This document shows, piece after piece, positions 218 to 45,105 of a stretch of 45,105 nt of DNA. The notes under the pieces are model-generated. The model was given only the letters and a program-made list of their open reading frames with translations. It did not search any database and was not told where the DNA came from. Both the position numbers and the translations under genes were made by a program. The stretch's first letter is position 1, and each line of letters begins with the position of its first letter. This DNA comes from Schmidtea nova (taxonomy: Eukaryota), in the NCBI GenBank assembly GCA_044892505.1, contig CM097882.1, positions 283,978,896 through 284,024,000 of the forward strand, written 5' to 3'.

Positions 218-222
<5 letters not shown>

Positions 223-304
<82 letters not shown>
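223..304. repeat. (TA)n microsatellite
   Basis: About 41 uninterrupted AT units. Confidence 0.98.
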
Positions 305-4305: not shown

Positions 4306-6916
4306 CAGGCGAACCCGCTTAATATCATGCTTACGGTTCCAAAAAAAAATCATGATATTAAGCGGGTCGTGATAATAACCGAAACTCGCTTAATATCCAC
4401 ATACGTGACATTAACCGAAAACTCGGTTATTATCATTATTCATGACAATAACCGAAATTTTATTTCAATAGAGAATTTATTTATGTATTTATTTATGAAA
4501 AAAAGACATTATATTGACTACTTAGTAATAATTTATTTATTTTTAATATACATCCAATATATTGACTAGTAATAATTCATTTATTTATTTATACATATAC
4601 ATATATACGCTCGCAAATTTATTTGAACCATTTTTCTAATGTTAATTGGCGTGTTTTGCTTTCATTTTTTAAGTGTGCTGAACTATATTATCCAACTGAT
4701 TTAAACAGTCCCAAGCTGCAGCATTGTTATTTGTTAAAAAAATTTGTATATTTTTAAAAGATTCTAAAGCAATCTTGTTGGTTATAGTTGTTGCAGTTGA
4801 TTCTGATTCATCGTCGCTATCATCACTTGCCGAAATTATTATTTTCATTTTGCTTTTTTTGTTCCACGATGGATTCCACAATCATTTGATCATTCAAAGG
4901 TTCTGAACATTCTTTATTGATATCCATTTCCAAATATTCATTAAAATCAAAATCCAGTTCATTTATATTCAAAGTAAGTTCGTCACTTTCAATTAAATCT
5001 GGAGCATTATTACAAAACTTTGCCTTTTTGAAACAATTTTGTACAGTTATGCTGCTAACCTTGTTCCATGCTTCTTTTATTAAAAGTACCGCATCCAATA
5101 GATTAAGTTTTTTTACTATTTGCCCAGCTTGTATTTGATCAGTGGAAGATTCAATTGCTGCTAGTAATTTCAATACAAGTAATCGACAATAATGGAACTT
5201 AAAATTGCGGATAATGCCTTGATCACATGGTTGAGCTAGTGATGTTACATTGGGTGGGAGGAAAATTAATTCGATGTTATTAAATTTTAACTTTGGATGC
5301 GCAGAGCAATTGTCTAAGACTAAAGCAATCTTCCGACTTTGAGAATACAGTTCTTTATCCCATTGACGTAGCCATTCTTCGAATATAGAGGACGTCATCC
5401 AGGCATTTAAATTATTTTTATAGTTTACAGGTAACTGTCTAACACCTCGAAAGCAACGCGGTGTTTTAGATTTGCCAATTACTAAAACTAGTTGCTTCTC
5501 ACCATCCATACTGGCACAAAGTAAAATAGTAACTCTTTCTTTTGATACTTTACTCCCAGAAAGTTCAGTTGCCTTAAAGACATGTGAACCATTCGGCATT
5601 GCACGCCACAAAAGGCCAGTTTCGTCGGCGTTGAAAATATCTTTTGGTTGATAGCGGCGGAATACATCGACCAAGGTTGTAGATAACCATTCTTCTGCTG
5701 CAGGAACATCTGCATCAACTTTTCCCCCATGTGCTTTTTTATATACGATTCCAAATCTTTTCTTCCATCTATCTAACCATCCATTAGTGGCCACAAAATT
5801 TATGACGATAGATCTCTAGCAAATGCTTCAGTTTTGACACGCAGTATTTCACCGCTGATGCTAATGTTGGTGGCTAAAGCACCCATAAACCATTTATACA
5901 ATGCTTTATCTATATCTTCAGCTCTGCTATGCCGTTTTCTTTTTCTATTGCTGTTTAAGTTTACAACATCAGATAATGCAATGAATCAATGTTGAATTTC
6001 TTAGCAACAGCTGCATATGTTTGTTTTGGTGGTCCATCACAAGTTGCTATAATATCCAATTTTTGTTTTACAGTTAATTCTGTTCGTTTACGTTCTGTCA
6101 TTTTTGATTTAGCCCTTGTAAGAAATTATAAATTACATACATGTGTATTAAAACAACAATCACTTTAATCTCAAAAAAAATTAAGAAAACTTATTAAAAT
6201 TTACCTCTGTTTATATCAAAACCCTGTAGATTTTGCTTGCTTCCAATAAATATATGTATTTTAAATTAAAATTATCAAGTTTCTGATTAGATATGTATTT
6301 CAAAACCATTTAATACTTTATTAGATAAAATATATATTGACAGAACTGCATCTAATGTTATTAACCAACTGCGCATTATCATCAATTCTAGGTGTGTTTA
6401 CTTTTTAAATGCTCACCTGTTACATTTTGGATGAGTACATTCAATATATGTATTTATGTGCAAATAAATGCGTTTTTTAAAAGATTTGAAAAACGAAAAA
6501 GGAAAATTGTTTAAATATGATTTTCACGGTTTTCTATCACCATCTTGCGTTTTTATTGTGCAATAAGTTTGTTTTTATAAGAAATATAAGAAAACAGTTA
6601 CAAAATATAGGAAATGTAAATTATATTTAATGTTTCAGTTTTAAATTTTTTAAACTTCTTTTGTGTGAACTTTGATAAAAAAGATTATAAAAAAATTCAT
6701 AAAAAATCATGATATTAAGCGAATTTGAAATATCAAAATAAAAAAATATTCATGATAATAAGCGGGAAATAGATATTATGCAAGATGATATTAACTGAGT
6801 AAAAATGTATTGATTTAATAGTGTTTAGCAAGTGGATTTTGAGTTTTAGTGATATTAAACGGGTCGTGATAATAACCGAGGTGATATTATTAATGAATAT
6901 ATTAATGATTAGACTG
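4306..6916 (-). mobile_element. Tigger/pogo DNA transposon (intronic)
   Basis: Imperfect CAG-starting TIRs (CAGGCGAACCCGCTTAATAT at 4306; ..ATTAATGATTAGACTG|TA ending 6916). Subterminal GATAATAACCGA repeats at both ends. Encloses the transposase. Confidence 0.7.
4669..6101 (-). pseudogene. Tigger-type transposase (HTH, CENP-B HTH, DDE_1), frameshifted
   Basis: MTERKRTELTVKQKLDII at 6101; GWLDRWKKRF, IFNADETGL, LVLDNCSAH, FLPPNVTSLAQPCDQGII; acidic tail continues in the 4669-4881 frame. Confidence 0.92.
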
Positions 6917-17386: not shown

Positions 17387-17822
17387 TGTAGTGCCTCCGT
17401 CATATATATCTTTATATTGTAATATATTAAAAATATTCATTTATGTTAAATTTAACATATTCTTATATATAAAAACACAAGTGAGTTGTTTAAATATCCA
17501 AATAAAACCAGCAGAATTTAAAATTAGAAGAAAAAAAGGACTTGAAGCATTTCAAAGCAGAATTTAAAATTAGAGGAAAAAAAGCACTTGCAGCATTTCA
17601 AAGTAGAAGAAAATAAATCACTTTAAGAAAATGTATTCAGATATAGATTTGCAACCTGCTACTGTTGTAGCGCTACAAAAACTCAGATGTTTTCTCACGG
17701 ATACTAAAAAGAACAAGCAATGTTACTTAAAAATAAATATTTTATTAGTGTTTATTTTGTATTTTATCTTTTATCCGATTATGACAAATACAAAACGGGG
17801 TATAGAAATACAGAGCCCCACA
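17387..17822 (+). repeat. 5' LTR (436 bp, TG...CA)
   Basis: TGTAGTG...CCCCACA; direct repeat of 20176-20602; contains an internal ~46-bp duplication. Confidence 0.92.
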
Positions 17823-20175: not shown

Positions 20176-20602
20176 TGTAGTGCATCCGTCATATATATCT
20201 TTATATTGTAATATATTAAAAATATTCATATATATTAAATTAAACATATGCTTATATATAAAAAACAAGTGAGTTGTTTAAATATCCAAATAAAACCAGC
20301 AAAATTTAAAATTAGAAGAAAAAAGCACTTGAAGCATTTCAAAGCAGAATTTAAAATTAGAGGAAAAAAAAGCACTTGCAGCATTTCAAAGTAGAAGAAA
20401 ATAAAGCACTTTAAGAAAATGTATTCAGATATAGATTTACAACCTGCTACTGTTGTAGCGCTACAAAAACTCAGATGTTTTCTCACGGATACTAAAAAGA
20501 ACAAGCAATGTTACTTAAAAATAAATATTTTATTAGTGTTTATTTTGTATTTTATCTTTTATCCGATTAAGACAAATACAGAACGGGGTACAGAAATACA
20601 GA
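20176..20602 (+). repeat. 3' LTR (last ~8-10 bp missing)
   Basis: Aligns to the 5' LTR with roughly 15 differences by eye; diverges before the terminal GCCCCACA, so no TSD can be checked. Confidence 0.9.

Positions 20603-30528: not shown

Positions 30529-30532
<4 letters not shown>

Positions 30533-30610
<78 letters not shown>
30533..30610. repeat. (TA)n microsatellite
   Basis: About 39 TA units. Confidence 0.98.
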
Positions 30611-30659: not shown

Positions 30660-31570
30660 CATGAACATTACAAATAATATTAAGAAAATTATTTTTTAAA
30701 AATATGAAACAGACAAAACAGTAAAATAAATATCTAATAAATATCTAATATACCTTAAGTCTGCCACGGTCTCGGAAATAATACAAAAAGTATAAAGAAA
30801 CAGGAACAATAGAAACTTAAATACACAGCTATAATAGGAGAAAGATTTCCAATGCTGAATCAGATGAGAAAATAAAGGAAAGAATTGAAGAAGACATTTT
30901 TGCTACATTAAATGAAATCAAGACGATTCTAGCCACTAGTCATAACACAAACGTATCCACATCAACACTACACAGCACAATTAAATTATTCGAATATAGT
31001 TTTGAACGTATCACTTAATACTGGCGAGGCGTAACGTATAAGATCATATAGAAATGTATAAGAAATGGACCAAACTAAATTAGTTTTTACAGATGAAATG
31101 GGTGTGAATTGTTCAATGAGAAGAAGATTTGGGAGATCATTACTAGGTACAGCACCACGTAAAACAGTAACATCCATAGGAAGTAAAAATATATCAATAT
31201 CTGCAGCTATAACAAAGGATGAACTACTATATTTTAAAACAAATGTTGGTGCATTTAATTCTGACTCTTTTTCACTAATTATAAACGATTTGATGGATAA
31301 ATTAAGATTCAAGAATCTGACAGGGATGACGATTATTTGTGACAATGTACTTTTTCGTAAGTCCGAATCAATACAAAACCTTATTCGGGAAAATGAACAT
31401 ACATTACTTTTCTTGCCTCCGTACAGTCCTCAACTGAATCCTATAGAACAGATATTTGGCGTTTGGAAAGAAAAAATAAGATCAAGAAATTGTTAGAATC
31501 AGGATTCTTTGTTTGGAGCCATTGAAACAACTTCAAATCTAATAACAAGGGATCATTGCATCTCCTTTTA
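30660..31570 (+). pseudogene. Tc1/IS630-like DD34E transposase (degenerate 5' half, intact DDE core 31065-31496)
   Basis: LVFTDEMG..IICDN..FLPPYSPQLNPIE; 34 residues between the second D and E. Confidence 0.9.
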
Positions 31571-35248: not shown

Positions 35249-35752
35249 ATGATAAAAACAACAAAGTTAAAACGATTATTTATTCAGCAAATGGAGGAAA
35301 AACTGAAAGAAATCGAAGAATTTCTTAACACAGAAAACGAAACATTAGCAACAATTGGCAAGAAAATAAACCGATTTAGAGAAATTGAATTTCAAGAACC
35401 CACAACACAGACCGAGGAAACAGATGAATTAATAAAGATAACAGAAAGAACAAGTAAAATCGACATAAAAACCCGCTACAAATGGTACAGAGCACGACTA
35501 GAGAATGCGGAGCTAAACATTAGATGCAGACAAATAGAACAACAATTAACCCCAACATACAATCGATGGAGGGCGCAAGGGGTAGAAGCAGCGAAAAAAT
35601 ACCGACAGTGCTATATATGTGAAAACAACGAGATACAAATTATGTTTTTACCTTGCGGACATTTCCGTTTTTGTAAGATCTGTGCCAGCAAGTGTGACCG
35701 GTGTCCGATGTGCAACTTTACTGTGAATGAAAAAATTGTAGTTTATTTGTAA
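35249..35752 (+). CDS. IAP-type C-terminal RING (C3HC4) E3 ligase with N-terminal coiled coil, no BIR
   Basis: CYICENNEIQIMFLPCGHFRFCKICASKCDRCPMCNFTVNEKIVVYL* versus XIAP [46 protein letters not shown] overlaps the stop (35751-35756). Confidence 0.9.
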   Translation: MIKTTKLKRLFIQQMEEKLKEIEEFLNTENETLATIGKKINRFREIEFQEPTTQTEETDELIKITERTSKIDIKTRYKWYRARLENAELNIRCRQIEQQLTPTYNRWRAQGVEAAKKYRQCYICENNEIQIMFLPCGHFRFCKICASKCDRCPMCNFTVNEKIVVYL

Positions 35753-36219
35753 TAAATGTTTAGAGTTGATTAGTAAAATGTCGAATGGTGAATCATGGGA
35801 ACAATCATTGTATTTAAATAATTTTTGAGCTACTACAAAGTAGTCCGGTAAGAATCCACTGGGAGGCACCGATTGATCAACCCATTCAGAGCATATAGAA
35901 AGGGGCCCATCGCAAATGTTGGAAAGTTTTTGTGATGTGATTGATCACCACATCCCGCATTAATAGACCAACGCGATCTTTTTGTATATTTTGGTTGGGG
36001 AGAGAGATAGGGAAATCTTGATGGAGTAAGGCGCGCATAGAAAAATTAATAAAATTTGAAGCAGACTGATCAGAAAATAGTTACGATAAAATAGAAAATG
36101 AATGACGGTATAAAAAGGTGCATAATCAGCTCGCATAGAAGTAGTTATAACTCAGCTGAGAAATTTAAGTCGCTAGCGAAGTTAAGAATTGTGATTAACC
36201 GGTTAAGTAAAGTTATAAA

Positions 36220-36312
36220 GTTATTAGAGTTGTCCCTTGAAACAAAGGGTTATTAGCGGTTTGTCCCTTGAAACAAAGGGTTATTAGCGGTTTGTCCCTT
36301 GAAACAAAGGGT
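36220..36312 (+). repeat. 31-bp tandem repeat, ~3 copies
   Basis: TGTCCCTTGAAACAAAGGGTTATTAGCGGTT at 36231, 36262 and 36293. Confidence 0.95.
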
Positions 36313-36313
36313 T

Positions 36314-36582
36314 GAGGCCAATGAGCCATATTGAATGACCTAGCTAGGCGTTATGGAGAGATATTAAATTGAGGCCAATAGAGCCATGCGAGAGATTAAA
36401 TTGAGGCCAATAGAGCCATATGAGAGATTAAATTGAGGCCAATAGAACCATATGAGAGATTAAATTGAGGCCAATAGAGCCATATGAGAGATTAAATTGA
36501 GGCCAATAGAGCCATATGAGATATTAATTTAAGGCCAATAGAGCCATGTGAGATATTAAAATTGAGGCCAAAAAGAGCCATA
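36314..36582 (+). repeat. 32-bp tandem repeat, 7 copies plus a partial, nearly all with GGCCAAT
   Basis: (G/A)AGGCCAA at 36371, 36403, 36435, 36467, 36499, 36531 and 36564 (last copy CCAAA). Confidence 0.95.
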
Positions 36583-37190
36583 GAGAATTATAGAGATATC
36601 CGGATAATTAGTAACAGAGGGAATATAGGCCATAGTTGTGATCGGCAACGAGATTAAGAATAGTGCGCACTAGTAGTTAAGAAATGCGAGTAAAGCTGAT
36701 TATGCAACCTGAAGTAAAGCATGCAAGGAGAATAATAAAAAATTAGAGCTGACCGGAGAAACCGGCAGACTAGGTAAAACGATAGCTAGCAATGAGTAAT
36801 GAATAGAGATGATAAAATAATGATAAACGAGTCAGAAAGACTCAGGGAATTAGAGCGCTCAAGCGACCAATAATTGGGAAATTGTGGGAAAAGTAATTGA
36901 TTTGTAAAATATAGATAATTATTACGACATAAATAGATAATTGTGACCAGTCTATAGATAATTTAAATAGACTAAAAATAAAGGGAAATCTGGGGATTGG
37001 GAAATAATGAAAACCCGGTAATAATTAATCCCGAAAGAAAGGGAATAAAAGCGCGACGATAACAATAATGTATCGTTGAGGACCTTTGTATTTTAGATAT
37101 ACAAATCAATCAAATCAATCAATCAAGCAAGAAGAATCAGAACACGATAAGAAATAGGACAGGAAAATTGAGTATACAAAAGTAATCCCG

Positions 37191-38570
37191 TTGAGAACAG
37201 GAGTAAAGAGTGTCGTAATAAAGCCAACAGAAAAGAAAGTCGGCAGTGAGAGTAACAAAAAAGACAAAACTAGTACTACCACAAAATCAGCAAAAAAGCA
37301 GAAAGCCGGCAAAGATAACAACAAAAACCCACAAGGGAGTAAAGCGAGGAAGATAATAAGAGACAAATCGATTATCGAAAACGATAAATTGTCAGTAGTA
37401 AGCAACAGCTCAAGTAACAAAGAAAACCAAGCGGAACCCAAGGAGAACCAAACAAGTGAAATAGAAATCGACGAAACTAACAACGATAATATCGAAGAAG
37501 TAGAAAACGAGGTAGAACCAGAGGTAGAAATCAACGAGAGTGATAACGAAAGTATAATATCGGATAACGAAGTAATAAGAGAAACAGAAAGCGACTCAAG
37601 CTCGAGTGAAACAGAAGACGAACATAACAACGAACTAGAAACAAGAGGAAACGAAAGTAAAATAACTCAAGACAGCGGAATTGAAATGGGTGAACCAAGA
37701 GAAGAAATAAAGGATAAATTTTCAGGAGAACCATTTAACGGAGATGCGAGTAAATTAGAAACTTTTCTAAAGGAATTTGGCATATTCGTGGAGGTATGCA
37801 AGTGGAAAGCTGAAACAACAGTAAGCAGAATTCAGTTATATTTGAAAGATAGTGCATTGGACCTATATTTGGAAGCGAAAAATGGTACCAATCCACCTGC
37901 AAATTGGACAGCGATAAAGGATTTTTTCCAACAAACCTTTGGAATAAATAAAGTGCTAAGCGAGGCATTCATAGAATTTTCAATGAGGAAACAGAAGATG
38001 AATGAGTCTAACGCGGTATACGCGAGCGAACTGAAAAAATTAGCAAAATCGGTATTCAAGGATGGGGGTCCAATAAACGAGGAACTAATGGCAGCCATCT
38101 TCATAGGAGGATTAAGAAGACCCGACATAAGAGCGCAAGTGGGATGCCAAGGATGCAAAACCATAGATCAAGCGTTAGAAACAGCTAACCGATTCGAATT
38201 GCACATGATAGGAAGCGAGGGCAGAATTTACTTAGCCATGGACACAGCGCAAACCGAACAAGAGGTAAATCTCAACAATCACATCCCAAATTCGCAACAG
38301 TTAAACCGACCACCCCCTCAACGAAGGAATGAAGGAAATAAAGTGCAGAACTTTGGAAACCAAAACAATTACAACCCTCAAGGACAAACAAAACAATGTA
38401 AAACATGTGGAAAGTTGGGACACTGGCAGCAAGAATGCTATCAAAATTTGAATTGCGGAAAATGTGGGGTCAAAGGACATTCGGAGAGTAGATGTTCTAC
38501 GATAACCTGTTTTAATAGCGGACGACCTGGTCACTACTCAAGAAATTGTGGACAAAAAAGTAATCAGTGA
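37191..38570 (+). CDS. gag: Polyprotein segment 1: acidic N-terminus, Ty3/Gypsy Gag capsid, three CCHC knuckles
   Basis: PFNGDASKLETFL..LYLKDSA..W..IKDFF..KQKMNESNAVY..FIGGL; CKTCGKLGHWQQEC, CGKCGVKGHSESRC, CFNSGRPGHYSRNC (38397-38549); true start codon unresolved. Confidence 0.92.
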   Translation: MRTGVKSVVIKPTEKKVGSESNKKDKTSTTTKSAKKQKAGKDNNKNPQGSKARKIIRDKSIIENDKLSVVSNSSSNKENQAEPKENQTSEIEIDETNNDNIEEVENEVEPEVEINESDNESIISDNEVIRETESDSSSSETEDEHNNELETRGNESKITQDSGIEMGEPREEIKDKFSGEPFNGDASKLETFLKEFGIFVEVCKWKAETTVSRIQLYLKDSALDLYLEAKNGTNPPANWTAIKDFFQQTFGINKVLSEAFIEFSMRKQKMNESNAVYASELKKLAKSVFKDGGPINEELMAAIFIGGLRRPDIRAQVGCQGCKTIDQALETANRFELHMIGSEGRIYLAMDTAQTEQEVNLNNHIPNSQQLNRPPPQRRNEGNKVQNFGNQNNYNPQGQTKQCKTCGKLGHWQQECYQNLNCGKCGVKGHSESRCSTITCFNSGRPGHYSRNCGQKSNQ

Positions 38571-39860
38571 GGAAACTGGCAGAATAATGGAAACCGGCAA
38601 AATTACGGAAATCAAACAAATACCGTAAACCGACAAGATTATGGAAACCAACAAGTCCATAATAACCATAATCAGAACAAAACTACCACCAAAGAAATAC
38701 ATTTGATGCAAGAAGTCCAAAGGTTGACGGAACTTATAAACAACACGACGAGAGGAAATCCACAAACCAATCCACAGCAAATTAGTATGATGAGAAAAAT
38801 AGAAAGCGAAAACGAACGATTGAATCGAGAAAGTCAAGCACTACACGCTCAGGAATGGGCAAGAATACAAAGAGAAGATGAACAAAAACAGCAAGAAAGA
38901 GAGCGACAACCTCTAAGAATTAACATGTTGAGAGCAACAAATCAAACAGATACCCACGAGAAAGAAACCACATTAGAAATAAATTCGAATCCAACCGACA
39001 ATGGAAGTCGAAAAGGAGTAATACAAGACGATAAGGAAGCAGAAAAAGAAATAGAAAAGGAAGTAGAAACTGAGATAAACCAGGAAGAGAGGAGGAAAAT
39101 TTGGAAAAAAGGAATGATGGTAATCATGCCCAACAACCATATGTTTCGATTCCAATATAACACAAAAGAAGAGGTGGCAATACTGTTTAACAAAGTAAAC
39201 CAAATGGTTCCAGGAGTAACAAAACTGCCCAGAGAAGCGTTCCTACAAATAGACGGTGCGCCAGAAGTAAAGTTGAAATTAACGGATATATGGGAAAACA
39301 TGGGAGTAGTAGAAACAAAAAGAAACGTGATGATTATCAAAGAAATAGAACCAGAGAAAATCCCAGCACCAGTGCGTCACGAAACCCGAATCAGTCGAAT
39401 ATTTAAAGGAAAAATGATAAGAAGACGTTTGAAAGAGATAGACGAGTTGGAGAAGAAAATGAGAAAAGTCGAAGTAATAGAGGACAAGAGTGAACCAACA
39501 CCAGAGATTGACAAAAACGAACCAGAACGAACGGAGAATATACAGGGGGAAACGAACCAAATAGCACACATTAATATGTTAAGAAATACCACCAGAGAGT
39601 TTTCCGATGAGGAAGGAGATAGCGATATCAGTAGCCTAGCAGGAGACATATTAAACGAACCCGAAGACGAAAATAAAGAGAGAGAAGTAATAACGACCTC
39701 AGAACCTACACAGATAAAAGTAGATGAAATCCAGAAATTACTAGATAACTCGCTAGACGTAATATATAACGAAGAGTTCATGGACAAGAAACAATACCGG
39801 AAATTCATGAAAGCATTATTACAAATGAACTACAAAGAATGGTTACAAGACCGGAAGTAG
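38571..39860 (+). CDS. Polyprotein segment 2 (in frame with Gag after TGA): N/Q-rich, coiled coil, possible Ubl, acidic
   Basis: 38703-37191 is divisible by 3 and the frame is open from 38571; beta-grasp-like MVIMPNNHMFRFQYNTKEEVAILFNKV..LTDIWENMGV (39111-39338). Confidence 0.75.
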   Translation, partial: GNWQNNGNRQNYGNQTNTVNRQDYGNQQVHNNHNQNKTTTKEIHLMQEVQRLTELINNTTRGNPQTNPQQISMMRKIESENERLNRESQALHAQEWARIQREDEQKQQERERQPLRINMLRATNQTDTHEKETTLEINSNPTDNGSRKGVIQDDKEAEKEIEKEVETEINQEERRKIWKKGMMVIMPNNHMFRFQYNTKEEVAILFNKVNQMVPGVTKLPREAFLQIDGAPEVKLKLTDIWENMGVVETKRNVMIIKEIEPEKIPAPVRHETRISRIFKGKMIRRRLKEIDELEKKMRKVEVIEDKSEPTPEIDKNEPERTENIQGETNQIAHINMLRNTTREFSDEEGDSDISSLAGDILNEPEDENKEREVITTSEPTQIKVDEIQKLLDNSLDVIYNEEFMDKKQYRKFMKALLQMNYKEWLQDRK

Positions 39861-42040
39861 ACATGTTAAATCGATACGTAGGGAAATTAATAGAGGAACC
39901 ACTCCTCAATTACACCATCTCAATAATAATAAATACATCTACACCAAGAATCTGGATCAAAACTCCATTTACAGACGATATCTACAGATGGGTAGAGGAC
40001 AGGCTAGGTAGTTCATATAAAAACAAATTCATCTATTCGCAGAATAGACTCGTAAAGAAAAGAACGCATTTAGTAGAAACAGGTATATGGCCAGGAGAAG
40101 TAACCCTGTTATCAATATGTGATGAAAAGGAAGGAGAGAACCTACAAGAAGTTGCAAAGGAAGCAAACACGTGCTTTGAAAGGAGAATAAAACCACGGTT
40201 AGAATACGAGAAAGGACGAGTCTTACGAAAGAATCTAAATTCCCTGATAGAACAAATCATACCACAAGTCAAAAAACATAGAAAGGAGTTAATGCGAAGC
40301 GAATACGAGAAGCTGAAACGATGCATCGAGTGCATACGTGACACAAGTCACACGAGATGGTCACAGATCTCACACGACAAATTAATCGCAAAAATGGGAA
40401 AAACAATGTTCAGACAAGGGAAAATAACGGATCTAAAAATTTCAGTAGAGTTACCTAATGAGGACACCAAAGAAATTGAAGTGGTAGCAGATTGCACCAT
40501 AAGAGAATTAGTAAAGATCATAAACGAGACACTAGTGCAGACAGAACCAGAAGACGAATGGGAAGACGACATAATCATGAAATATAACGAACATGTATTA
40601 TGGGATCACGATGAGAGACGACTATATAAAATCGGTATATGGGATAATCACCAAACCATCCACGTTATCAGAATGGACGATACACCCAGAGAAACTGCTA
40701 AAGATGAGAAAAAAGAACGGGAACGACAAAAAGAAGTTATACACAAATTACAACAAATAGCAGAAATTTATCGAAATTGGCGGATTTGGCCGGAGTGGGA
40801 AAATGCATTAGAAGAACTCAATCTCAACAGACGAATACGAACATCCGTAGAAAAACAATGGAACGAGCAAGGAAAATGTTGGGAACCAAAAGAAGGGGAA
40901 TATAAAGAAGAATATGAAAGAGGAATGGAAGGTGACTGCGAACCAGAAATGGGAAGGGTTTGCATGGTGACAAGAAAAACTACGCCAATAGATCTAGATG
41001 GACCAGAAACAGCGGCTATATGGTTAGAAAAGGAAAAGCAAAAAACGGAAGAATTAGTCGAAATATTAAAAACTAATGCGCACGGTAAGAGAAAAGTAAT
41101 AAAAGGTCTCGCAGATTTTTTCGTGGTTAATGGAGAAGATGTAACATGCTTGCGTAAAGTAGCAAAAGCAATCGCAGAATATAAAAGAGTCAACGAGTGG
41201 TGTCCGGAACAACTAGACCACGTAATTAGGAAATGGAGAAATCAAGAATACTCGCAAGAAATTCCACAAAAAGTACATTTAAGAATAATATATCCAAACA
41301 AGGATAAGGAAGAATTTTGGGTAGGAATAGCAGAAAAAATTTGAGATATTAAAAAGAAATTGAGATACGAACCACCATTCCATTTACAACACCAAGGACG
41401 ATCACTAGATAACAGTTTGGAAATCTGAATAACGCCAGCACAACTAGATCTCATGAATACCTTGACAGTAGAAGCAATAGCAGGTCAACCATTGAAACGT
41501 AAAGAAGAAAACCATAAACCACACGGAAGTATAAGTACGCCGAGCCCGATGAAATCAGTATTAACGCAAGGGACAAGTTCAAAACGATCTGAGACAACAC
41601 CCAGAGGGAATAGAGAAAGGACTCCACCACAACCATATGACGTGGACGAAATATTAACAGACAGCGACGACATGATAGAAGAGCTAACCAAATTAACAAA
41701 GGAAAAAGACGACAACATTTTCGAAAGAATACAAGAACTACCTACGACAATACAAGTAACCAACACCGGAGAAGCAGAAGTCGAAGATGAAATAATAATA
41801 GAAGAAGTAAACGATTTGACAGAAGACGAAACGAGAGGAGCGAATGTACAATTAACACAAGAAATGGAAAGATGGTTGGAAGAAAGAGCCAACGAACCAA
41901 GAGATGTCACGGAAGAAACCGGACGGGCAACAAGGTTTGTGGAAACAGGTACAGGAATGGATAGACGACCTCGAGGTAGACCCAAGACAGATCCAGCGAA
42001 TGTAGTCATCAGAAATAAGGATGAAAAGAGACAAGATTAA
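39839..42040 (+). CDS. Polyprotein segment 3: ubiquitin-like domains plus acidic linker (two internal TGA)
   Basis: Ubl 40433-40675 LKISVELPNEDTKEIEV..TIRELVKII..IMKYNEHVL..LYKIGI..QTIHVI; weaker Ubls at 39911-40120 and 41273-41455; the frame continues across TGA 41342 and 41426 into ORF 41453. Confidence 0.75.
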
Positions 42041-42520
42041 TGGGAATTATGTTTAAAGAAATTAAATAAAATCGCGGAGATAAAAGAAAAAGAGACAACA
42101 CCAATATGTCAAGGGAAGGAATGGATATCGAAAACAATAATGGAAATATTGGCAATAATTGATCCGGAATTGAGAAAATACTGGCGGATAACTGAGATAA
42201 GCGAAAAGGCGAAGTCATTACACAGCGCAATCGCACCCATCTTACCGGAATTCATAAAAGAGAAAACTAAGTCAAATCATTTAGACTGGCAAGGAACCAC
42301 TACGTTAATAAAGAAACTGACAGAAGGAGCGGAAACAGATAACAAATACGTAATAGCCATTGCATACACTATTTACAACCTACTAACACTGAGTAGAGGT
42401 CGACCAAAACCCACTGCGTTGGAAAGACACATAAAAAATACCGCAAAAATTATAGCCAGAGAAATAGAACCATACATCATTAACAAAGGAGGATGGGAAA
42501 CATTTATCAAAACTAACCAG
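42041..42520 (+). CDS. Polyprotein segment 4: Bcl-2-like domain
   Basis: IKNTAKIIAREIEPYIINKGGWETFIK aligns with Bcl-xL alpha6-BH2 ([28 protein letters not shown]); helical pattern upstream; BH1 NWGR degenerate (DNKY). Confidence 0.7.
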
Positions 42521-42616
42521 AAGAAAACGCAAGCCAAGAACATGAAAAAGAAATTCGAAGAGATATTGGGAGAATTGGAAAAAGAACAAGCAGGAACAGG
42601 AAACGCGAAGTCGTCA

Positions 42617-44545
42617 ATGAACCTGAGTTCAATTATAATGATGATGTTGATATGGATGATTAGCACCGATAGCGCAACAGCGTTCGAAGTATTTGATTGC
42701 GATCAGATGGCATTAGGCGAAAAATATTCATTGCGAGGTACAGAGCAATGTAAGGATGCAACTCCAACGGAACTAAAGACAATACAAAAGAAACAACTCT
42801 ACCATGTGTACCAGGAAGCGGAATTGATAAAAACCATGGTTAGAGAGTGTAAAATTTATAAAACAAGATTCGCTTTCTATTGTGGACACCGTCATTATTC
42901 GGCAATCGTAATGCCAGGAACCGAAAGAGAATCAGTAATGCTGCAAGGAGAAGATTGCGAAAAATTGTTCAGACACGGGGAAATAGAAACAAGAGATAAG
43001 ATAAGATTGAAAGGGAAAGTTGGAGCGATATTACAACAAACCTTATACGTAGCAGCAGCTATCACAGGAGGAGAAGGCTATTGTCAAGGAGAAACCTACC
43101 CTATATTCGGAAAACCAGCAACGAACTTAGTGGTGATTGACACCTACACAGTAGAACTTAAAGCATACGAAGGATTCTTTGACCCAGCGACAGGAGAAAT
43201 GAAAACCCTGCCGATATGTAAGATAGACGCGAATACCTGCCAAACAGGCCTGTCAACTTTAACATACCAAACGCGAGGAAATGAATGTCAATTACAATTT
43301 TTAAAGCAAGCAGAATTCGATGAAATACAAGGAAAGACTTTCCAAGAGGAAGAGGAAGACGAAGTAGCAAGAGGAAAGATTCTCAAAGAAACAGTACAGG
43401 TAGAAGGAAAGATCGAAGCAACACAGGAAAAACAAATCAGAATGAGAAATACCCCAACGGTACTCATCTCCTCGGATGAAGATATAGGAATGAGATTCGT
43501 AAAAGGTAAAACAGCCTTGAAATGCGGAGTATCAATGTTAGAAACCAACTATCCCGGTATCTTCGTATCAAGACAAGATGTACCTAACGCAAAACGTCAA
43601 GTAAACACGAACGATGTTAAACTACACCTCTACGTAAACAATAAAATGGATTTCCTATTTCACAGAGGACAAGCTTCATTACAAAAGGTGTATTACGACC
43701 TTATTAACAACGATTGTATATTGAATAGAGAGATACTGAAAACAAAGTTAGCAGTGGCCATCACCAATCCAGACAGTGCAATGCCACTATTGCCACTAAG
43801 AGAAGGTCATTTTGGAAGAGTAGTTGGTGAAGTTATGTACGTATACATATGCAAAAAGACTAACGCAAAAGTTGCAACGGCGACAAAATTACAACCAGGG
43901 CAATGTACAAACGAATTAGAAATAGAATACAAAGGAAAAGTTAGATACGTACAGCCAGTAAAAAGAATTATAAATCCAGTAAGCTTCGAACCAAACCCTT
44001 TCAATTGCAGCAACGCATACGGACCATTATATCAAAAACCGGATGGAAATTGGGTTATGTTTCCCGCAAGAACGGAAGTACCAGCACCAAGAGAATTCGA
44101 ACTAATGCGATTATCGAAAAGACGAAAATTCAAAGACGTCGATGTAAGCAATATGGGATTTTATAGCGCGAAAGATTTAGAAGCAGCAAGACAAAATATA
44201 CTGTTCCCAGCAAGGAGAGAAGCGGTACTATCCAGTATTGTAACTATAACAGGAGGAACAAATTACCAAGGTGGACCCAATTATGAACTACTTTTATCAC
44301 CAGCTCATTTTAAGAAAGCAACTGAGAATATGATGAAAGCGATGTGGGGAAGGTTTTTGATTTTCGGACAAATGATGGCAGGAATACTTGGTGTCATACT
44401 AATAATACAAATAATACGGGTGGTCATAACACAAATGCTCGCGTGTTTTTATATTTACAAAAGAGAAAAGAAAGTCAACTGGAAATTAGTGTTAGGATTC
44501 TTACCATTTCTGGCTAAAACCATGGTGTTACAGATGAAGAAATAG
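42617..44545 (+). CDS. env: Polyprotein segment 5: internal signal peptide plus chuvirus-like (class III, gB-like) envelope glycoprotein
   Basis: IIMMMLIWMISTDSATA|FEVFDC; LYYDL..C.LNREIL..LA..NPD..GH..VVGEV.Y...C; QP..RII; GFYSAKDL; FPARREAVL; W..FLIFG..AGILGVILII TM; all follow chuviral G patterns. Confidence 0.85.
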   Translation: MNLSSIIMMMLIWMISTDSATAFEVFDCDQMALGEKYSLRGTEQCKDATPTELKTIQKKQLYHVYQEAELIKTMVRECKIYKTRFAFYCGHRHYSAIVMPGTERESVMLQGEDCEKLFRHGEIETRDKIRLKGKVGAILQQTLYVAAAITGGEGYCQGETYPIFGKPATNLVVIDTYTVELKAYEGFFDPATGEMKTLPICKIDANTCQTGLSTLTYQTRGNECQLQFLKQAEFDEIQGKTFQEEEEDEVARGKILKETVQVEGKIEATQEKQIRMRNTPTVLISSDEDIGMRFVKGKTALKCGVSMLETNYPGIFVSRQDVPNAKRQVNTNDVKLHLYVNNKMDFLFHRGQASLQKVYYDLINNDCILNREILKTKLAVAITNPDSAMPLLPLREGHFGRVVGEVMYVYICKKTNAKVATATKLQPGQCTNELEIEYKGKVRYVQPVKRIINPVSFEPNPFNCSNAYGPLYQKPDGNWVMFPARTEVPAPREFELMRLSKRRKFKDVDVSNMGFYSAKDLEAARQNILFPARREAVLSSIVTITGGTNYQGGPNYELLLSPAHFKKATENMMKAMWGRFLIFGQMMAGILGVILIIQIIRVVITQMLACFYIYKREKKVNWKLVLGFLPFLAKTMVLQMKK

Positions 44546-45105
44546 GACGCAAATTTAAAAAGATAATGAATGACGAACAAGCAAGACAACAGCTCAAGAG
44601 AGAAAGAAAAGGTTTATGGGAGAGGATGAAAGGATATAAAACCCAAAATGATTCGAGCGACGACGATGATGACGATGATGACTATAAAGGAGGACAAGTG
44701 TATAAGAACCAAGCACCACAATACATCGAAAAGAACCCAGCTGACGCATGGAAATGTTACGCACCCCCACCAACAATGTATCAAGAACCACTACAAGGAG
44801 GAAGAACGACCACGATGCAAATGATGCCAATGACGAATGTATACCCCATGATACCAGAAGATTATAAAATGAGAAGATGCAGAAGTGTGGATCCACAAGG
44901 AGATACGCATACGATCGCCGTGATGTCATCAAACACAGGTCCAGTACTAACCACGACAATAGAAATTAACGGAAGAGAAATCGAAGCAATAATCGACACT
45001 GGAGCAAATATTTCCGCCATCGACATCAAATGGATACCACAAGAGCAAAGACGGGATATAGAAAGGACGAACGTCCACGTAATTGCATGTAGCAAAGAAA
45101 TTGTA
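44518..45105 (+). CDS. pol: Polyprotein segment 6 (-1 frame): cytoplasmic tail and start of retropepsin; runs off the window
   Basis: Open frame absent from the ORF track (no stop): NHGVTDEEIGRK...GPVLTTTIEINGREIEAIIDTGANISAID; DTG at 44995-45003. Confidence 0.9.

What the first reader, a model, noticed from the sequence alone, without database searches (positions are those of the whole stretch)
42683..45105. Chuvirus-like glycoprotein placed upstream of, and apparently fused to, the protease
The Env ectodomain, TM and tail carry chuviral G motifs. A single -1 shift in TAAAAC (~44515-44520) links the tail to an open frame reaching DTGA. Chuvirus-like env capture is known for BEL/Pao elements (Anakin), and a gB-like env for Ascaris Tas. 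Here the Gag is Gypsy-type and env precedes pol, so this looks like an independent capture. The topology would tether PR(-RT-IN) to the cytoplasmic side of the Env membrane and couple enzyme packaging to budding (inference).
Basis: partly seen in the sequence, partly recalled or inferred. Interest (0 to 1): 0.85.

Follow-up and report, generated by a model that had tools for sequence, protein, structure and literature searches.

The report
Envelope gene embedded in giant retrotransposon polyprotein
The window ends inside a giant Gypsy-type retrotransposon whose viral-style membrane-fusion protein sits between gag and the protease; this layout was already described for planarian "Burro" elements, and this copy looks broken rather than specially regulated.

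Summary
An 801-codon ORF starting at 42140 encodes a signal peptide, a class III fusion-glycoprotein ectodomain starting at 42683, a membrane anchor and a short tail. It matches Pfam Monjiviricetes_fusion at E 1e-70. Its best structural matches are chuvirus glycoproteins, followed by herpesvirus gB. A retropepsin (DTGA) frame follows and stays open to the window end.

Thirteen related natural ORFs from at least four public datasets carry Env, PR, RT, RNase H and IN, and sometimes Gag, in one uninterrupted frame. Env embedded in the polyprotein is therefore a feature of the whole lineage. These Envs form one clade (200/200 bootstraps).

The layout is already published:
- Planarian Burro elements have BCL2-Env-PR in frame (Arkhipova & Yushenova 2019).
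- GAG-ENV-POL elements occur in flatworms, bryozoans and nematodes (Chary & Hayashi 2026; Sacco 2022).

The window copy also has a Bcl-2-like domain directly before Env.

The proposed programmed -1 shift is not supported:
- Seven of nine related loci are in frame.
- The overlap has no slippery heptamer and no downstream RNA structure.
- This copy carries four in-frame stops and two frame changes in all.

Verdict: a new, probably defective member of a known kind.

The parts
35249..35752 (+). Accessory RING-finger ORF (167 aa, zf-C3HC4_3). It may belong to this element or be the remnant of a neighbouring copy.
   Evidence: Pfam E 3.7e-11. Homologous to the last accessory ORF of relative L002, also 167 aa (E 2.7e-8). 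The A-rich strand bias starts at about 35.0 kb.
35753..37190 (+). Non-coding LTR or leader region upstream of gag, with a 7-copy array of a 32-nt repeat at 36326-36613. The 5' end of the element is not fixed.
   Evidence: Similar short tandem arrays lie upstream of the coding region in L001 and L002.
37191..38570 (+). gag: Ty3/Gypsy-type capsid region plus two CCHC zinc knuckles. A third knuckle-like stretch lacks one Cys.
   Evidence: zf-CCHC E 6e-6. BLASTP to Gag of L002, L004, P0007 and P0017 gives E 1e-9 to 1e-11. The L002 and L004 Gags reach Pfam Retrotrans_gag above its cut-off, and L005 matches it below cut-off, all in the region aligned to the window Gag.
38571..45105 (+). Post-gag polyprotein gene (unknown part, Bcl-2-like domain, Env, PR ...), cut off by the window end. 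It is broken as it stands: three in-frame stops and two frame changes inside it. Counting the gag stop, there are four stops and two frame changes from 37191 onward.
   Evidence: Counts. Relatives encode the equivalent as one ORF of 2146-4844 aa.
38571..42139 (+). Coding stretch of unknown function between gag and the Bcl-2-like domain.
   Evidence: Open stretches of 200-520 codons in 43%-A sequence. No hit in Pfam, PDB sequences or the relatives.
42272..42595 (+). Bcl-2-like helical domain directly upstream of the Env signal peptide (tentative).
   Evidence: AF2 model with pLDDT 56. All 50 best PDB matches are Bcl-2 family proteins, E 6.5e-3 to 4e-2. Same position as the BCL2 motif of Burro (PMC6431247).
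42617..42682 (+). Internal signal peptide of Env (residues 160-181 of the ORF).
   Evidence: Read from the translation. Relatives have a hydrophobic segment at the same place, hundreds of residues inside their polyproteins.
42683..44347 (+). Class III fusion-glycoprotein ectodomain, chuvirus/Monjiviricetes type.
   Evidence: Pfam PF24664 E 9.6e-71. AF2 pLDDT 81. Foldseek: chuvirus and related glycoproteins at E 1e-36 to 1e-29 with TM-score 0.5-0.6, herpesvirus gB at E 4e-13. Conserved cysteines present.
44348..44458 (+). Transmembrane anchor of Env, followed by a cytoplasmic tail of about 28 residues.
   Evidence: Kyte-Doolittle maximum 2.55 over residues 737-773. The tail is conserved with relatives at 39-59% identity.
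44905..45105 (+). N-terminal half of the retropepsin (PR) domain with DTGA, cut by the window end. It is in the -1 frame relative to Env and preceded by an acidic linker of about 130 residues in the same frame.
   Evidence: Pfam RVP E 1.2e-5, 26 bits against 20.7. BLASTP to PR of P0151, P0003, P0002 and P0162. The motif lies 150 codons after the end of the Env ORF, against 85-401 in relatives.

Best explanation
The finding covers the middle of a Burro-like giant Ty3/Gypsy LTR retroelement. In this lineage a chuvirus-type class III fusion glycoprotein is not a separate downstream env gene. It is a module inside the Gag-Pol polyprotein, placed after a Bcl-2-like domain and before the protease(s), RT, RNase H and integrase. 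Shown: the domain order, the fold class, the hydrophobic segments, and the single-ORF state in relatives. Inferred mechanism: an internal signal sequence sends the ectodomain into the ER lumen, and signal peptidase separates it from the upstream cytosolic part. The C-terminal anchor leaves the tail and everything downstream (PR-RT-IN) on the cytosolic face. The element's own protease then releases the enzymes, so enzymes and Env are made in equal amounts at the same membrane. The window copy does not encode this as it stands. Four in-frame stops and two frame changes cut its coding strand into six open stretches. The -1 offset between Env and PR is most likely one of these lesions, either a one-base length change or an assembly error, and not a programmed frameshift.
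For: Env identity: Pfam PF24664 E 9.6e-71; chuvirus glycoproteins are the best structural matches; gB fold. Lineage feature: P0003, P0006, P0012, P0151, P0159, P0162 and P0017 are uninterrupted natural ORFs with Env-PR-RT-RH-IN; P0002, P0007 and P0017 also hold Gag. The ORFs are contiguous in the DNA. They come from ENA ERZ25039515 and ERZ5540424, JGI 3300033082, and NCBI records. Seven of nine related loci keep Env tail and PR in one frame. The spacing from tail to PR motif in the window (150 codons) lies within the relatives' range. The fused Envs and the window Env form a clade in 200/200 bootstraps. Pol is Gypsy-type (RT_RNaseH_2, Integrase_H2C2, rve; no BEL/Pao families). A Bcl-2-like fold precedes Env, as in Burro (PMC6431247). 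L005 has LTR-like repeats 20.2 kb apart. Against programming: no X XXY YYZ heptamer in the 28-nt overlap; downstream RNA folds no better than shuffles (z 0.11); other breaks in the same copy. A short overlap of two frames is what a single-base indel leaves in sequence where about 7% of codons are stops.
Against: No other copy from the same genome was available: there was no exact match in the collection, and the nearest relatives are 37-59% identical. Whether this family's shift is fixed could therefore not be tested. Gag and the 801-codon Env ORF are themselves intact, so the copy is young or partly constrained. Two relatives (L008, L009) also end their Env ORF a few codons after the conserved tail motif, which could hint at recurrent evolution of a separate Env. 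The stretch between gag and Env has no homologue, so its stops cannot be proven to be lesions. Burro sequences themselves were not at hand, so the link to Burro rests on architecture only. The linker between tail and PR shows no significant similarity to relatives' linkers.
Confidence: 0.7

Rival explanations
1. Programmed -1 ribosomal frameshift. In this family Env ends after its tail, and a fraction of ribosomes slip into the PR frame within the 28-nt overlap. This would set an Env:Pol ratio much as retroviruses set Gag:Pol.
For: The two frames overlap, and the PR frame is open from just before the Env stop to the window end. Env and Gag ORFs are intact. Two relatives also end Env at the homologous place.
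Against: The overlap has no canonical slippery heptamer and no stimulatory structure (z 0.11). Seven of nine loci are in frame. The two exceptions are +1 with an 89-nt overlap and -1 with a 59-nt gap that no slip could bridge. The copy has other stops and another frame change.
Confidence: 0.12
2. Env is a separate gene in this family. Pol would be expressed from its own start codon in the PR frame (one lies shortly after the Env stop), by reinitiation or from a spliced or subgenomic RNA, with no fusion protein.
For: An ATG occurs in the PR frame about 16 codons after it opens. L008's downstream ORF starts with ATG two bases after the Env stop. Other GAG-ENV-POL elements are described as three ORFs (PMC13524379).
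Against: Most relatives are fused. A pol ORF downstream of five open stretches has no evident route to translation. No splice evidence is available.
Confidence: 0.1
3. The protease belongs to a different element nested into, or abutting, the Env-bearing one.
For: The linker between tail and PR has no significant similarity to relatives' linkers. The window ends before RT, so the pol type of this copy is unseen.
Against: No LTR, gag or composition break lies between Env and PR; the A-rich bias is continuous. The frames overlap by only 28 nt. The tail-to-PR spacing matches relatives. The PR piece is most similar to the PRs of the same Env-bearing relatives.
Confidence: 0.03
4. The frame change, and possibly some stops, are assembly errors in A-rich sequence, and the real copy is in frame.
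For: The coding strand is 43% A with many short A runs. One-base length errors are the usual error of long-read assemblies (general knowledge). Gag and Env are otherwise intact.
Against: Four in-frame stops of three different kinds are substitutions, not length errors. No read data could be examined.
Confidence: 0.05

Closest known systems
Burro / GYPSM1 giant Gypsy-like LTR retrotransposons of planarians (Grohme et al. 2018; Arkhipova & Yushenova 2019, PMC6431247)
   Same: Gag has CCHC knuckles. Env lies between a BCL2-like motif and PR, inside the polyprotein. That Env is reported to hit fusion glycoproteins of arthropod and fish mononegaviruses. The extra domains match (ankyrin, RING, apoptosis/ubiquitin themes). 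Polyproteins of about 4,800-5,100 aa compare with P0151 at 4,844 aa. Element size is above 20 kb (L005). Decayed copies with stops and frameshifts are reported for Dugesia japonica.
   Different: No Burro sequence was available for direct comparison. MATH, SUMO-like, BIR and dUTPase motifs were not detected in the window or the relatives. The relatives carry RNase_T and P4Ha_N ORFs not mentioned for Burro. The window's host is unknown.
GAG-ENV-POL 'errantiviruses' of Platyhelminthes, Bryozoa and Nematoda (Chary & Hayashi 2026, PMC13524379), and non-canonical nematode ERVs with a captured RNA-virus glycoprotein (Sacco et al. 2022, known to me only through that paper's citation)
   Same: A Ty3/Gypsy backbone with a class III (gB-type) Env placed between gag and pol.
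   Different: Those are described as three ORFs of ordinary size (regions of at most 10 kb). Here Env is a module of a giant polyprotein with accessory domains. Whether the two groups are the same lineage was not tested.
Anakin and other arthropod retroelements with chuvirus-like glycoproteins (Dezordi et al. 2020, PMC7642597; 114 gypsy elements noted in PMC13524379)
   Same: The Env is of the Jingchuvirales/Monjiviricetes glycoprotein family.
   Different: Anakin is BEL/Pao with env downstream of pol. The window Env is 77-83% different from the roughly 650-aa group of homologues and sits in a separate clade.
Glycoproteins of Chuviridae and allied Monjiviricetes (for example the Tacheng tick virus 4 glycoprotein returned by the fold search)
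   Same: Same Pfam family. Best structural matches: E 1.7e-36, TM-score 0.5-0.6 over about 660 columns.
   Different: Only 16-20% identity. The viral proteins are free-standing, about 650 aa long, and encoded by RNA genomes.
Polyproteins of enveloped positive-strand RNA viruses, as a likeness in working only (general knowledge)
   Same: Envelope proteins sit inside one polyprotein. They are delivered to the ER lumen by internal signal sequences while capsid and enzymes stay cytosolic, and cleavage is shared between host signal peptidase and a viral protease.
   Different: There is no homology. Here the enzymes are those of a retroelement, and the processing scheme is inferred.

Membership tests
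Class III viral fusion glycoproteins (gB / G / GP64) | Characteristic multi-domain ectodomain fold with a long central helix | tested here: met
   AF2 model pLDDT 81 with a central helix at residues 495-542. Foldseek gives at least 50 herpesvirus gB chains at E 4e-13 to 7e-11 over about 640-740 columns.
Class III viral fusion glycoproteins (gB / G / GP64) | Type I membrane protein: N-terminal signal, single C-terminal anchor, short tail | tested here: met
   Signal-like residues 160-181. One hydrophobic segment at 737-773 followed by a tail of about 28 residues.
Class III viral fusion glycoproteins (gB / G / GP64) | Trimer formation and membrane-fusion activity | not testable with these tools
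   No multimer modelling or assay was available.
Monjiviricetes / chuvirus-type glycoprotein (Pfam PF24664) | Profile match above the curated cut-off | tested here: met
   239 bits against a cut-off of 27, E 9.6e-71. 922 homologues in the full HMMER scan.
Monjiviricetes / chuvirus-type glycoprotein (Pfam PF24664) | Named chuvirus glycoproteins come back as the nearest viral relatives | tested here: met
   The top BFVD hits are glycoproteins of Tacheng tick virus 4, chu-like and chu-related viruses, Wenling crustacean virus 14 and a xinmovirus, at E 1.7e-36 to 2e-29. Sequence searches with names failed.
Monjiviricetes / chuvirus-type glycoprotein (Pfam PF24664) | Conserved cysteine framework | tested here: met
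   All 8 invariant columns, 6 of them Cys, and the nearly invariant cysteines are present in the window protein.
Burro-like giant Gypsy elements of planarians | Env located between gag and pol and in frame with them | tested here: inconclusive
   The order is met in the window. In-frame state is met in 7 of 9 related loci and 13 ORFs. The window copy has a frame change between Env and PR.
Burro-like giant Gypsy elements of planarians | BCL2-like domain immediately upstream of Env | tested here: inconclusive
   All 50 best PDB matches of the N-terminal domain are Bcl-2 family, but the model has pLDDT 56 and E is only 6.5e-3 to 4e-2. Pfam does not detect it.
Burro-like giant Gypsy elements of planarians | Typical Gag with retrotrans_gag motif and 2-3 CCHC knuckles | tested here: met
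   Two CCHC knuckles by Pfam. The capsid region is homologous to relatives' Gags that match Retrotrans_gag.
Burro-like giant Gypsy elements of planarians | Giant size (internal region up to 25 kb) with a polyprotein of several thousand residues | not testable with these tools
   The window ends in PR. Relatives have ORFs up to 4844 aa and LTR-like repeats 20.2 kb apart.
Burro-like giant Gypsy elements of planarians | Sequence relatedness to published Burro1-4 / GYPSM1, and a planarian host | not tested
   No Burro sequence or host label could be obtained with the tools. The AT-rich (about 26-30% GC) flanks fit a planarian only by my own recollection of planarian genome composition.
Ty3/Gypsy (Metaviridae) rather than BEL/Pao | Pol domain set and order PR-RT-RNaseH-IN with Gypsy-type families | tested here: inconclusive
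   Met in all relatives (RVT_1, RT_RNaseH_2, Integrase_H2C2, rve; no Peptidase_A17). In the window only the start of PR is visible.
Retroviral-type programmed -1 frameshift site | Slippery heptamer X XXY YYZ in the zero frame within the overlap | tested here: not met
   None is present in the 28-nt overlap (read).
Retroviral-type programmed -1 frameshift site | Stable stimulatory RNA structure just downstream | tested here: not met
   MFE -7.8 kcal/mol against a shuffle mean of -8.0, z 0.11.
Retroviral-type programmed -1 frameshift site | Frame offset conserved among relatives | tested here: not met
   Seven of nine loci are in frame. One is +1 with an overlap and one is -1 with a gap. Copies from the same genome were not available.
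Anakin (mosquito BEL/Pao with chuvirus-like env) | BEL/Pao pol with env downstream of pol | tested here: not met
   Env lies upstream of PR, and the relatives' pol is Gypsy-type.

The most novel reading that the evidence does not exclude
In this family, and independently in the lineages of L008 and L009, the ancestral in-frame Env-Pol fusion has been replaced by an Env ORF that ends just after the conserved cytoplasmic tail. Pol would then be reached by a non-canonical recoding or reinitiation event in the short overlap. This would be a device that lowers Pol relative to Env and has no counterpart among known retroelements.
Probability: 0.1. Interest if true: 0.6.

Novelty: new member of a known kind. 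Interest (0 to 1): 0.35.

Why it matters
Retroelements with the envelope protein inside the Gag-Pol polyprotein break the textbook gag-pol-env plan. They force a membrane-spanning topology on the replication polyprotein, more like that of enveloped RNA viruses. The arrangement has been noted only briefly in the literature, in one paragraph on planarian Burro elements and in a survey listing GAG-ENV-POL order.

- The embedded Env is a class III fusogen whose nearest viral relatives are chuvirus glycoproteins.
- The fused state occurs as uninterrupted ORFs in several independent public datasets.
- The fused Envs form one clade, so there was one old capture rather than many.
- A Bcl-2-like domain abuts the signal peptide.

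For this particular window the value is modest. It is a diverged and probably defective copy, and the programmed-frameshift idea that made it look special is not supported.

Tried and rejected
- **Word-indexed protein search.** It gave nothing three times: whole Env, its conserved part, and alignment A1. The full HMMER scan was needed.
- **PDB sequence searches.** Searches with Env and with two of the three unknown stretches between gag and Env gave nothing useful.
- **Names for homologues.** Nearly all are unnamed metagenome proteins. One cluster belongs to the wasp Leptopilina heterotoma, and one fused ORF is filed under a Flavobacteriaceae MAG.
- **Linker homology between Env tail and PR.** Not significant.
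- **Stop-codon reassignment.** Rejected, because the in-frame stops are of all three kinds.
- **LTRs.** None can be defined in the window because the 3' end is missing.
- **Remnants of a second copy upstream of the RING ORF.** None found.
- **First neighbour-joining run.** It had a numerical fault (logarithm of a negative number) and is superseded.

Steps left out on purpose:
- No protein was read across the Env/PR frame change or across the stops, and each open stretch was searched on its own.
- No contigs were looked up for the roughly 650-aa homologues, which may be exogenous animal viruses.

- Loci L001-L009 are unnamed metagenome contigs carrying related retroelements. I fetched them by look-up of proteins that my own search returned, so that copies could be compared.
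Full report
**What is in the window**

The window is AT-rich DNA (about 21-30% GC over most of its length) scattered with DNA-transposon remnants: a pogo-like DDE_1 ORF at 4823-5794(-) and a Tc1/mariner DDE_3 piece at 31065-31496(+). From about 35.0 kb to the window end the + strand becomes strongly A-rich (AT skew 0.26-0.45, 43% A) and carries a string of long open stretches. In this composition about 7% of random codons are stops, so stretches of 200-800 codons are coding sequence, not chance.

**The observation**

An 801-codon ORF starts at 42140. Pfam places it in PF24664 Monjiviricetes_fusion ("viral fusion glycoprotein") at E 9.6e-71, 239 bits against a cut-off of 27.
- Residues 160-181 read as a signal peptide. 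The mature chain then begins at 42683, the exact start given in the finding.
- A single strong hydrophobic segment (residues 737-773) is followed by a tail of about 28 residues.
- An AlphaFold2 model built on 83 homologues has mean pLDDT 81.
- Against solved structures, every top match is herpesvirus gB, the archetype of class III fusogens (E 4e-13 and weaker, about 640-740 aligned columns).
- Against predicted viral structures, the best matches are glycoproteins of chuviruses and their allies (Tacheng tick virus 4, chu-like and chu-related viruses, Wenling crustacean virus 14, a xinmovirus) at E 1.7e-36 to 2e-29 and TM-score 0.5-0.6. Rhabdo-like, nyavirus and gB proteins follow.
- All invariant columns of the family alignment, six of them cysteines, are present.

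So "chuvirus-like, class III" is confirmed, at 16-20% identity to the viral proteins.

A frame offset by -1 overlaps the end of this ORF by 28 nt. It stays open for 196 codons to the last base of the window and contains a DTGA retropepsin motif (Pfam RVP above its cut-off).

Upstream, the gag ORF (37191-38570) has two CCHC knuckles.

**Relatives**

A full HMMER scan of 1.84 billion representative proteins found 922 homologues. They fall into two groups.

- The nearest (E 1e-137 to 1e-57, 29-48% identity) are very long natural ORFs from metagenome assemblies.
- Pfam shows Env-PR-RT-RNaseH-IN in one uninterrupted ORF in P0003 (2855 aa), P0006 (2627), P0012 (3243), P0151 (4844), P0159 (3003), P0162 (4099) and P0017 (2146).
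- P0002, P0007 and P0017 also contain the Gag knuckles or Gag homology upstream of Env. P0001 and P0004 are Env-PR.
- The contigs confirm that these ORFs are contiguous DNA, not spliced models.
- They come from ENA ERZ25039515, ENA ERZ5540424 and JGI 3300033082. One NCBI record is filed under a Flavobacteriaceae MAG and is surely a mis-binned eukaryotic contig.
- The pol families are those of Ty3/Gypsy; none of the BEL/Pao families appears.
- Several relatives have two or three protease domains, ankyrin repeats, and accessory ORFs after pol (an RNase_T exonuclease, a RING finger, P4Ha_N).
- L005 has LTR-like direct repeats of 98% identity 20.2 kb apart. These are giant elements.

The second group of homologues (about 650 aa, 20-27% identity) has the size of free-standing viral G proteins or their endogenous copies. 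One cluster is from a wasp genome. I did not look up their contigs.

On 546 aligned columns, the window Env and the polyprotein-embedded Envs form one bipartition against 73 members of the second group in 200 of 200 neighbour-joining bootstraps (an earlier run was numerically faulty). The embedded Envs therefore go back to one capture shared by the group. This is not a capture peculiar to the window's element.

**Is the -1 offset a device or a lesion?**

I located the conserved Env tail in nine related loci and asked where the first protease motif lies.
- In seven loci it is in the same ORF, 85-401 codons further on.
- In the window it is 150 codons further on, in the -1 frame.
- The two exceptions differ. 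L008 has the PR-bearing frame at +1 with an 89-nt overlap. L009 has it at -1 but separated from the Env stop by a 59-nt gap, which no ribosomal slip could bridge.
- The closest relative (L007, 59% identity in the tail) is in frame.
- The 28-nt overlap in the window contains no canonical slippery heptamer.
- The RNA downstream folds no better than shuffled sequence (z 0.11).

The copy is interrupted elsewhere as well. Counting from the gag start to the window end, four in-frame stops (of all three kinds, which excludes a variant genetic code) and two frame changes cut the coding strand into six open stretches. Relatives read the equivalent in one or two ORFs. A short overlap of two open frames is what a single-base length change leaves behind in sequence this rich in potential stops.

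I therefore read the offset as a lesion, or possibly an assembly error. Two caveats apply. No sister copy from the same genome could be examined. Gag and Env are each intact. I did not read any protein across the frame change or the stops; each open stretch was searched separately.

**How it most likely works (in intact relatives)**

Shown: the order Gag - variable part - Bcl-2-like domain - signal sequence - ectodomain - anchor - tail - linker - PR(s) - RT - RH - IN; a hydrophobic segment at the start of the Env homology deep inside the polyproteins; and one anchor at its end.

Inferred:
- The internal signal sequence targets the nascent chain to the ER.
- The ectodomain is translocated, and signal peptidase frees it from the upstream cytosolic part.
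- The anchor returns the chain to the cytosol, so PR-RT-IN hang from the Env tail on the cytosolic face until the element's protease cuts them off.

**Comparison with what is known**

- Arkhipova and Yushenova (2019, PMC6431247) described the giant Gypsy-like Burro/GYPSM1 elements of the planarian Schmidtea mediterranea and a Dugesia relative. [quoted passage not shown] - To test the likeness, I modelled the 170 residues that precede the Env signal peptide in the window. The model is weak (pLDDT 56), yet all 50 best PDB matches are Bcl-2 family proteins (E 6.5e-3 to 4e-2). That is the Burro order BCL2-Env-PR.
- The RING ORF at 35249-35752 and the ankyrin repeats in relatives fit too. MATH, SUMO-like, BIR and dUTPase were not detected.
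- Chary and Hayashi (2026, PMC13524379) report the GAG-ENV-POL order with gB-type Env in Platyhelminthes, Bryozoa and Nematoda. They cite Sacco et al. (2022) for nematode elements with a captured RNA-virus glycoprotein and flipped env/pol order, and they note chuvirus-like glycoproteins next to gypsy pol genes in arthropods.
- Anakin (Dezordi et al. 2020, PMC7642597) is BEL/Pao with env after pol, and is not the same thing.

No Burro sequence was available to me, so membership rests on architecture. The host is not identified. AT-rich flanks and the literature make a flatworm likely, but that is an inference.

**Verdict**

It is partly wrong: the frameshift is not shown to be programmed, and the capture is not independent or new. 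The element is a new, diverged and probably defective member of a known kind.

The most novel reading still open is that this family evolved a separate Env ORF with non-canonical access to pol. I put that at about 0.1.

**Housekeeping**

- Consensus lines printed by the alignment tool were not used.
- In my reasoning I once recalled a short Bcl-2-family motif from memory.
- My notes quote ORF bounds as listed by the ORF tool.

Noticed in passing
window 35249-35752 (+): A 167-aa RING-finger ORF is homologous to the last accessory ORF of relative L002, where it follows pol and RNase_T. Here it lies about 1.4 kb upstream of gag, with no pol or RNase_T remnants before it. It is either a remnant of a second copy sharing an LTR or a different gene order. 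The 5' end of the element is therefore open.
   Followed up: partly
window 36326-36613 (+): Seven tandem copies of a 32-nt unit lie in the non-coding region upstream of gag. Relatives L001 (32-nt unit) and L002 (26-nt unit) have similar arrays in the same position, although the units differ in sequence.
   Followed up: partly
window 38571-42139 (+): About 3.5 kb of clearly coding, A-rich sequence lies between gag and the Bcl-2-like domain. It has no match in Pfam, PDB sequences or any relative, so it is a family-specific part of the polyprotein of unknown function.
   Followed up: partly
window 42272-42595 (+): A helical domain directly before the Env signal peptide folds like Bcl-2 family proteins: all 50 best PDB matches, but from a low-confidence model. 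This would be a possible apoptosis regulator carried by the element.
   Followed up: yes
window 17387-17814 and 20176-20602: A pair of direct repeats of about 430 nt (94-98% identical, 2.8 kb apart) encloses a GC-rich stretch with strong C excess (GC skew down to -0.46). It looks like a small LTR-bounded element unrelated to the finding. One ORF inside weakly matches DUF7041.
   Followed up: no
window 4823-5794 (-) and 31065-31496 (+): A pogo-like DDE_1 transposase ORF (E 1e-44) and a Tc1/mariner-type DDE_3 fragment (E 5.5e-25).
   Followed up: partly
L002, L004, L005, L008 (relatives): The relatives' polyproteins hold two or three retropepsin domains in series, ankyrin repeats between them, and 1,000-1,700 residues of unknown function after integrase. 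Accessory ORFs after pol encode an RNase_T-type exonuclease, and in L005 and L006 P4Ha_N-like pieces lie inside the LTR-bounded unit.
   Followed up: partly
P0006 (NCBI HBK71150.1): A 2627-aa Env-PR-RT-RH-IN ORF is filed in NCBI as a hypothetical protein of a Flavobacteriaceae metagenome-assembled genome. It is almost certainly a mis-binned eukaryotic retroelement contig.
   Followed up: no
L008 and L009 (relatives): Two relatives also end their Env ORF 5-12 codons after the conserved tail motif, as the window does, but with different frame relations to the protease ORF.
   Followed up: yes
window 220-300 and 30531-30610: Long (TA)n microsatellites.
   Followed up: no
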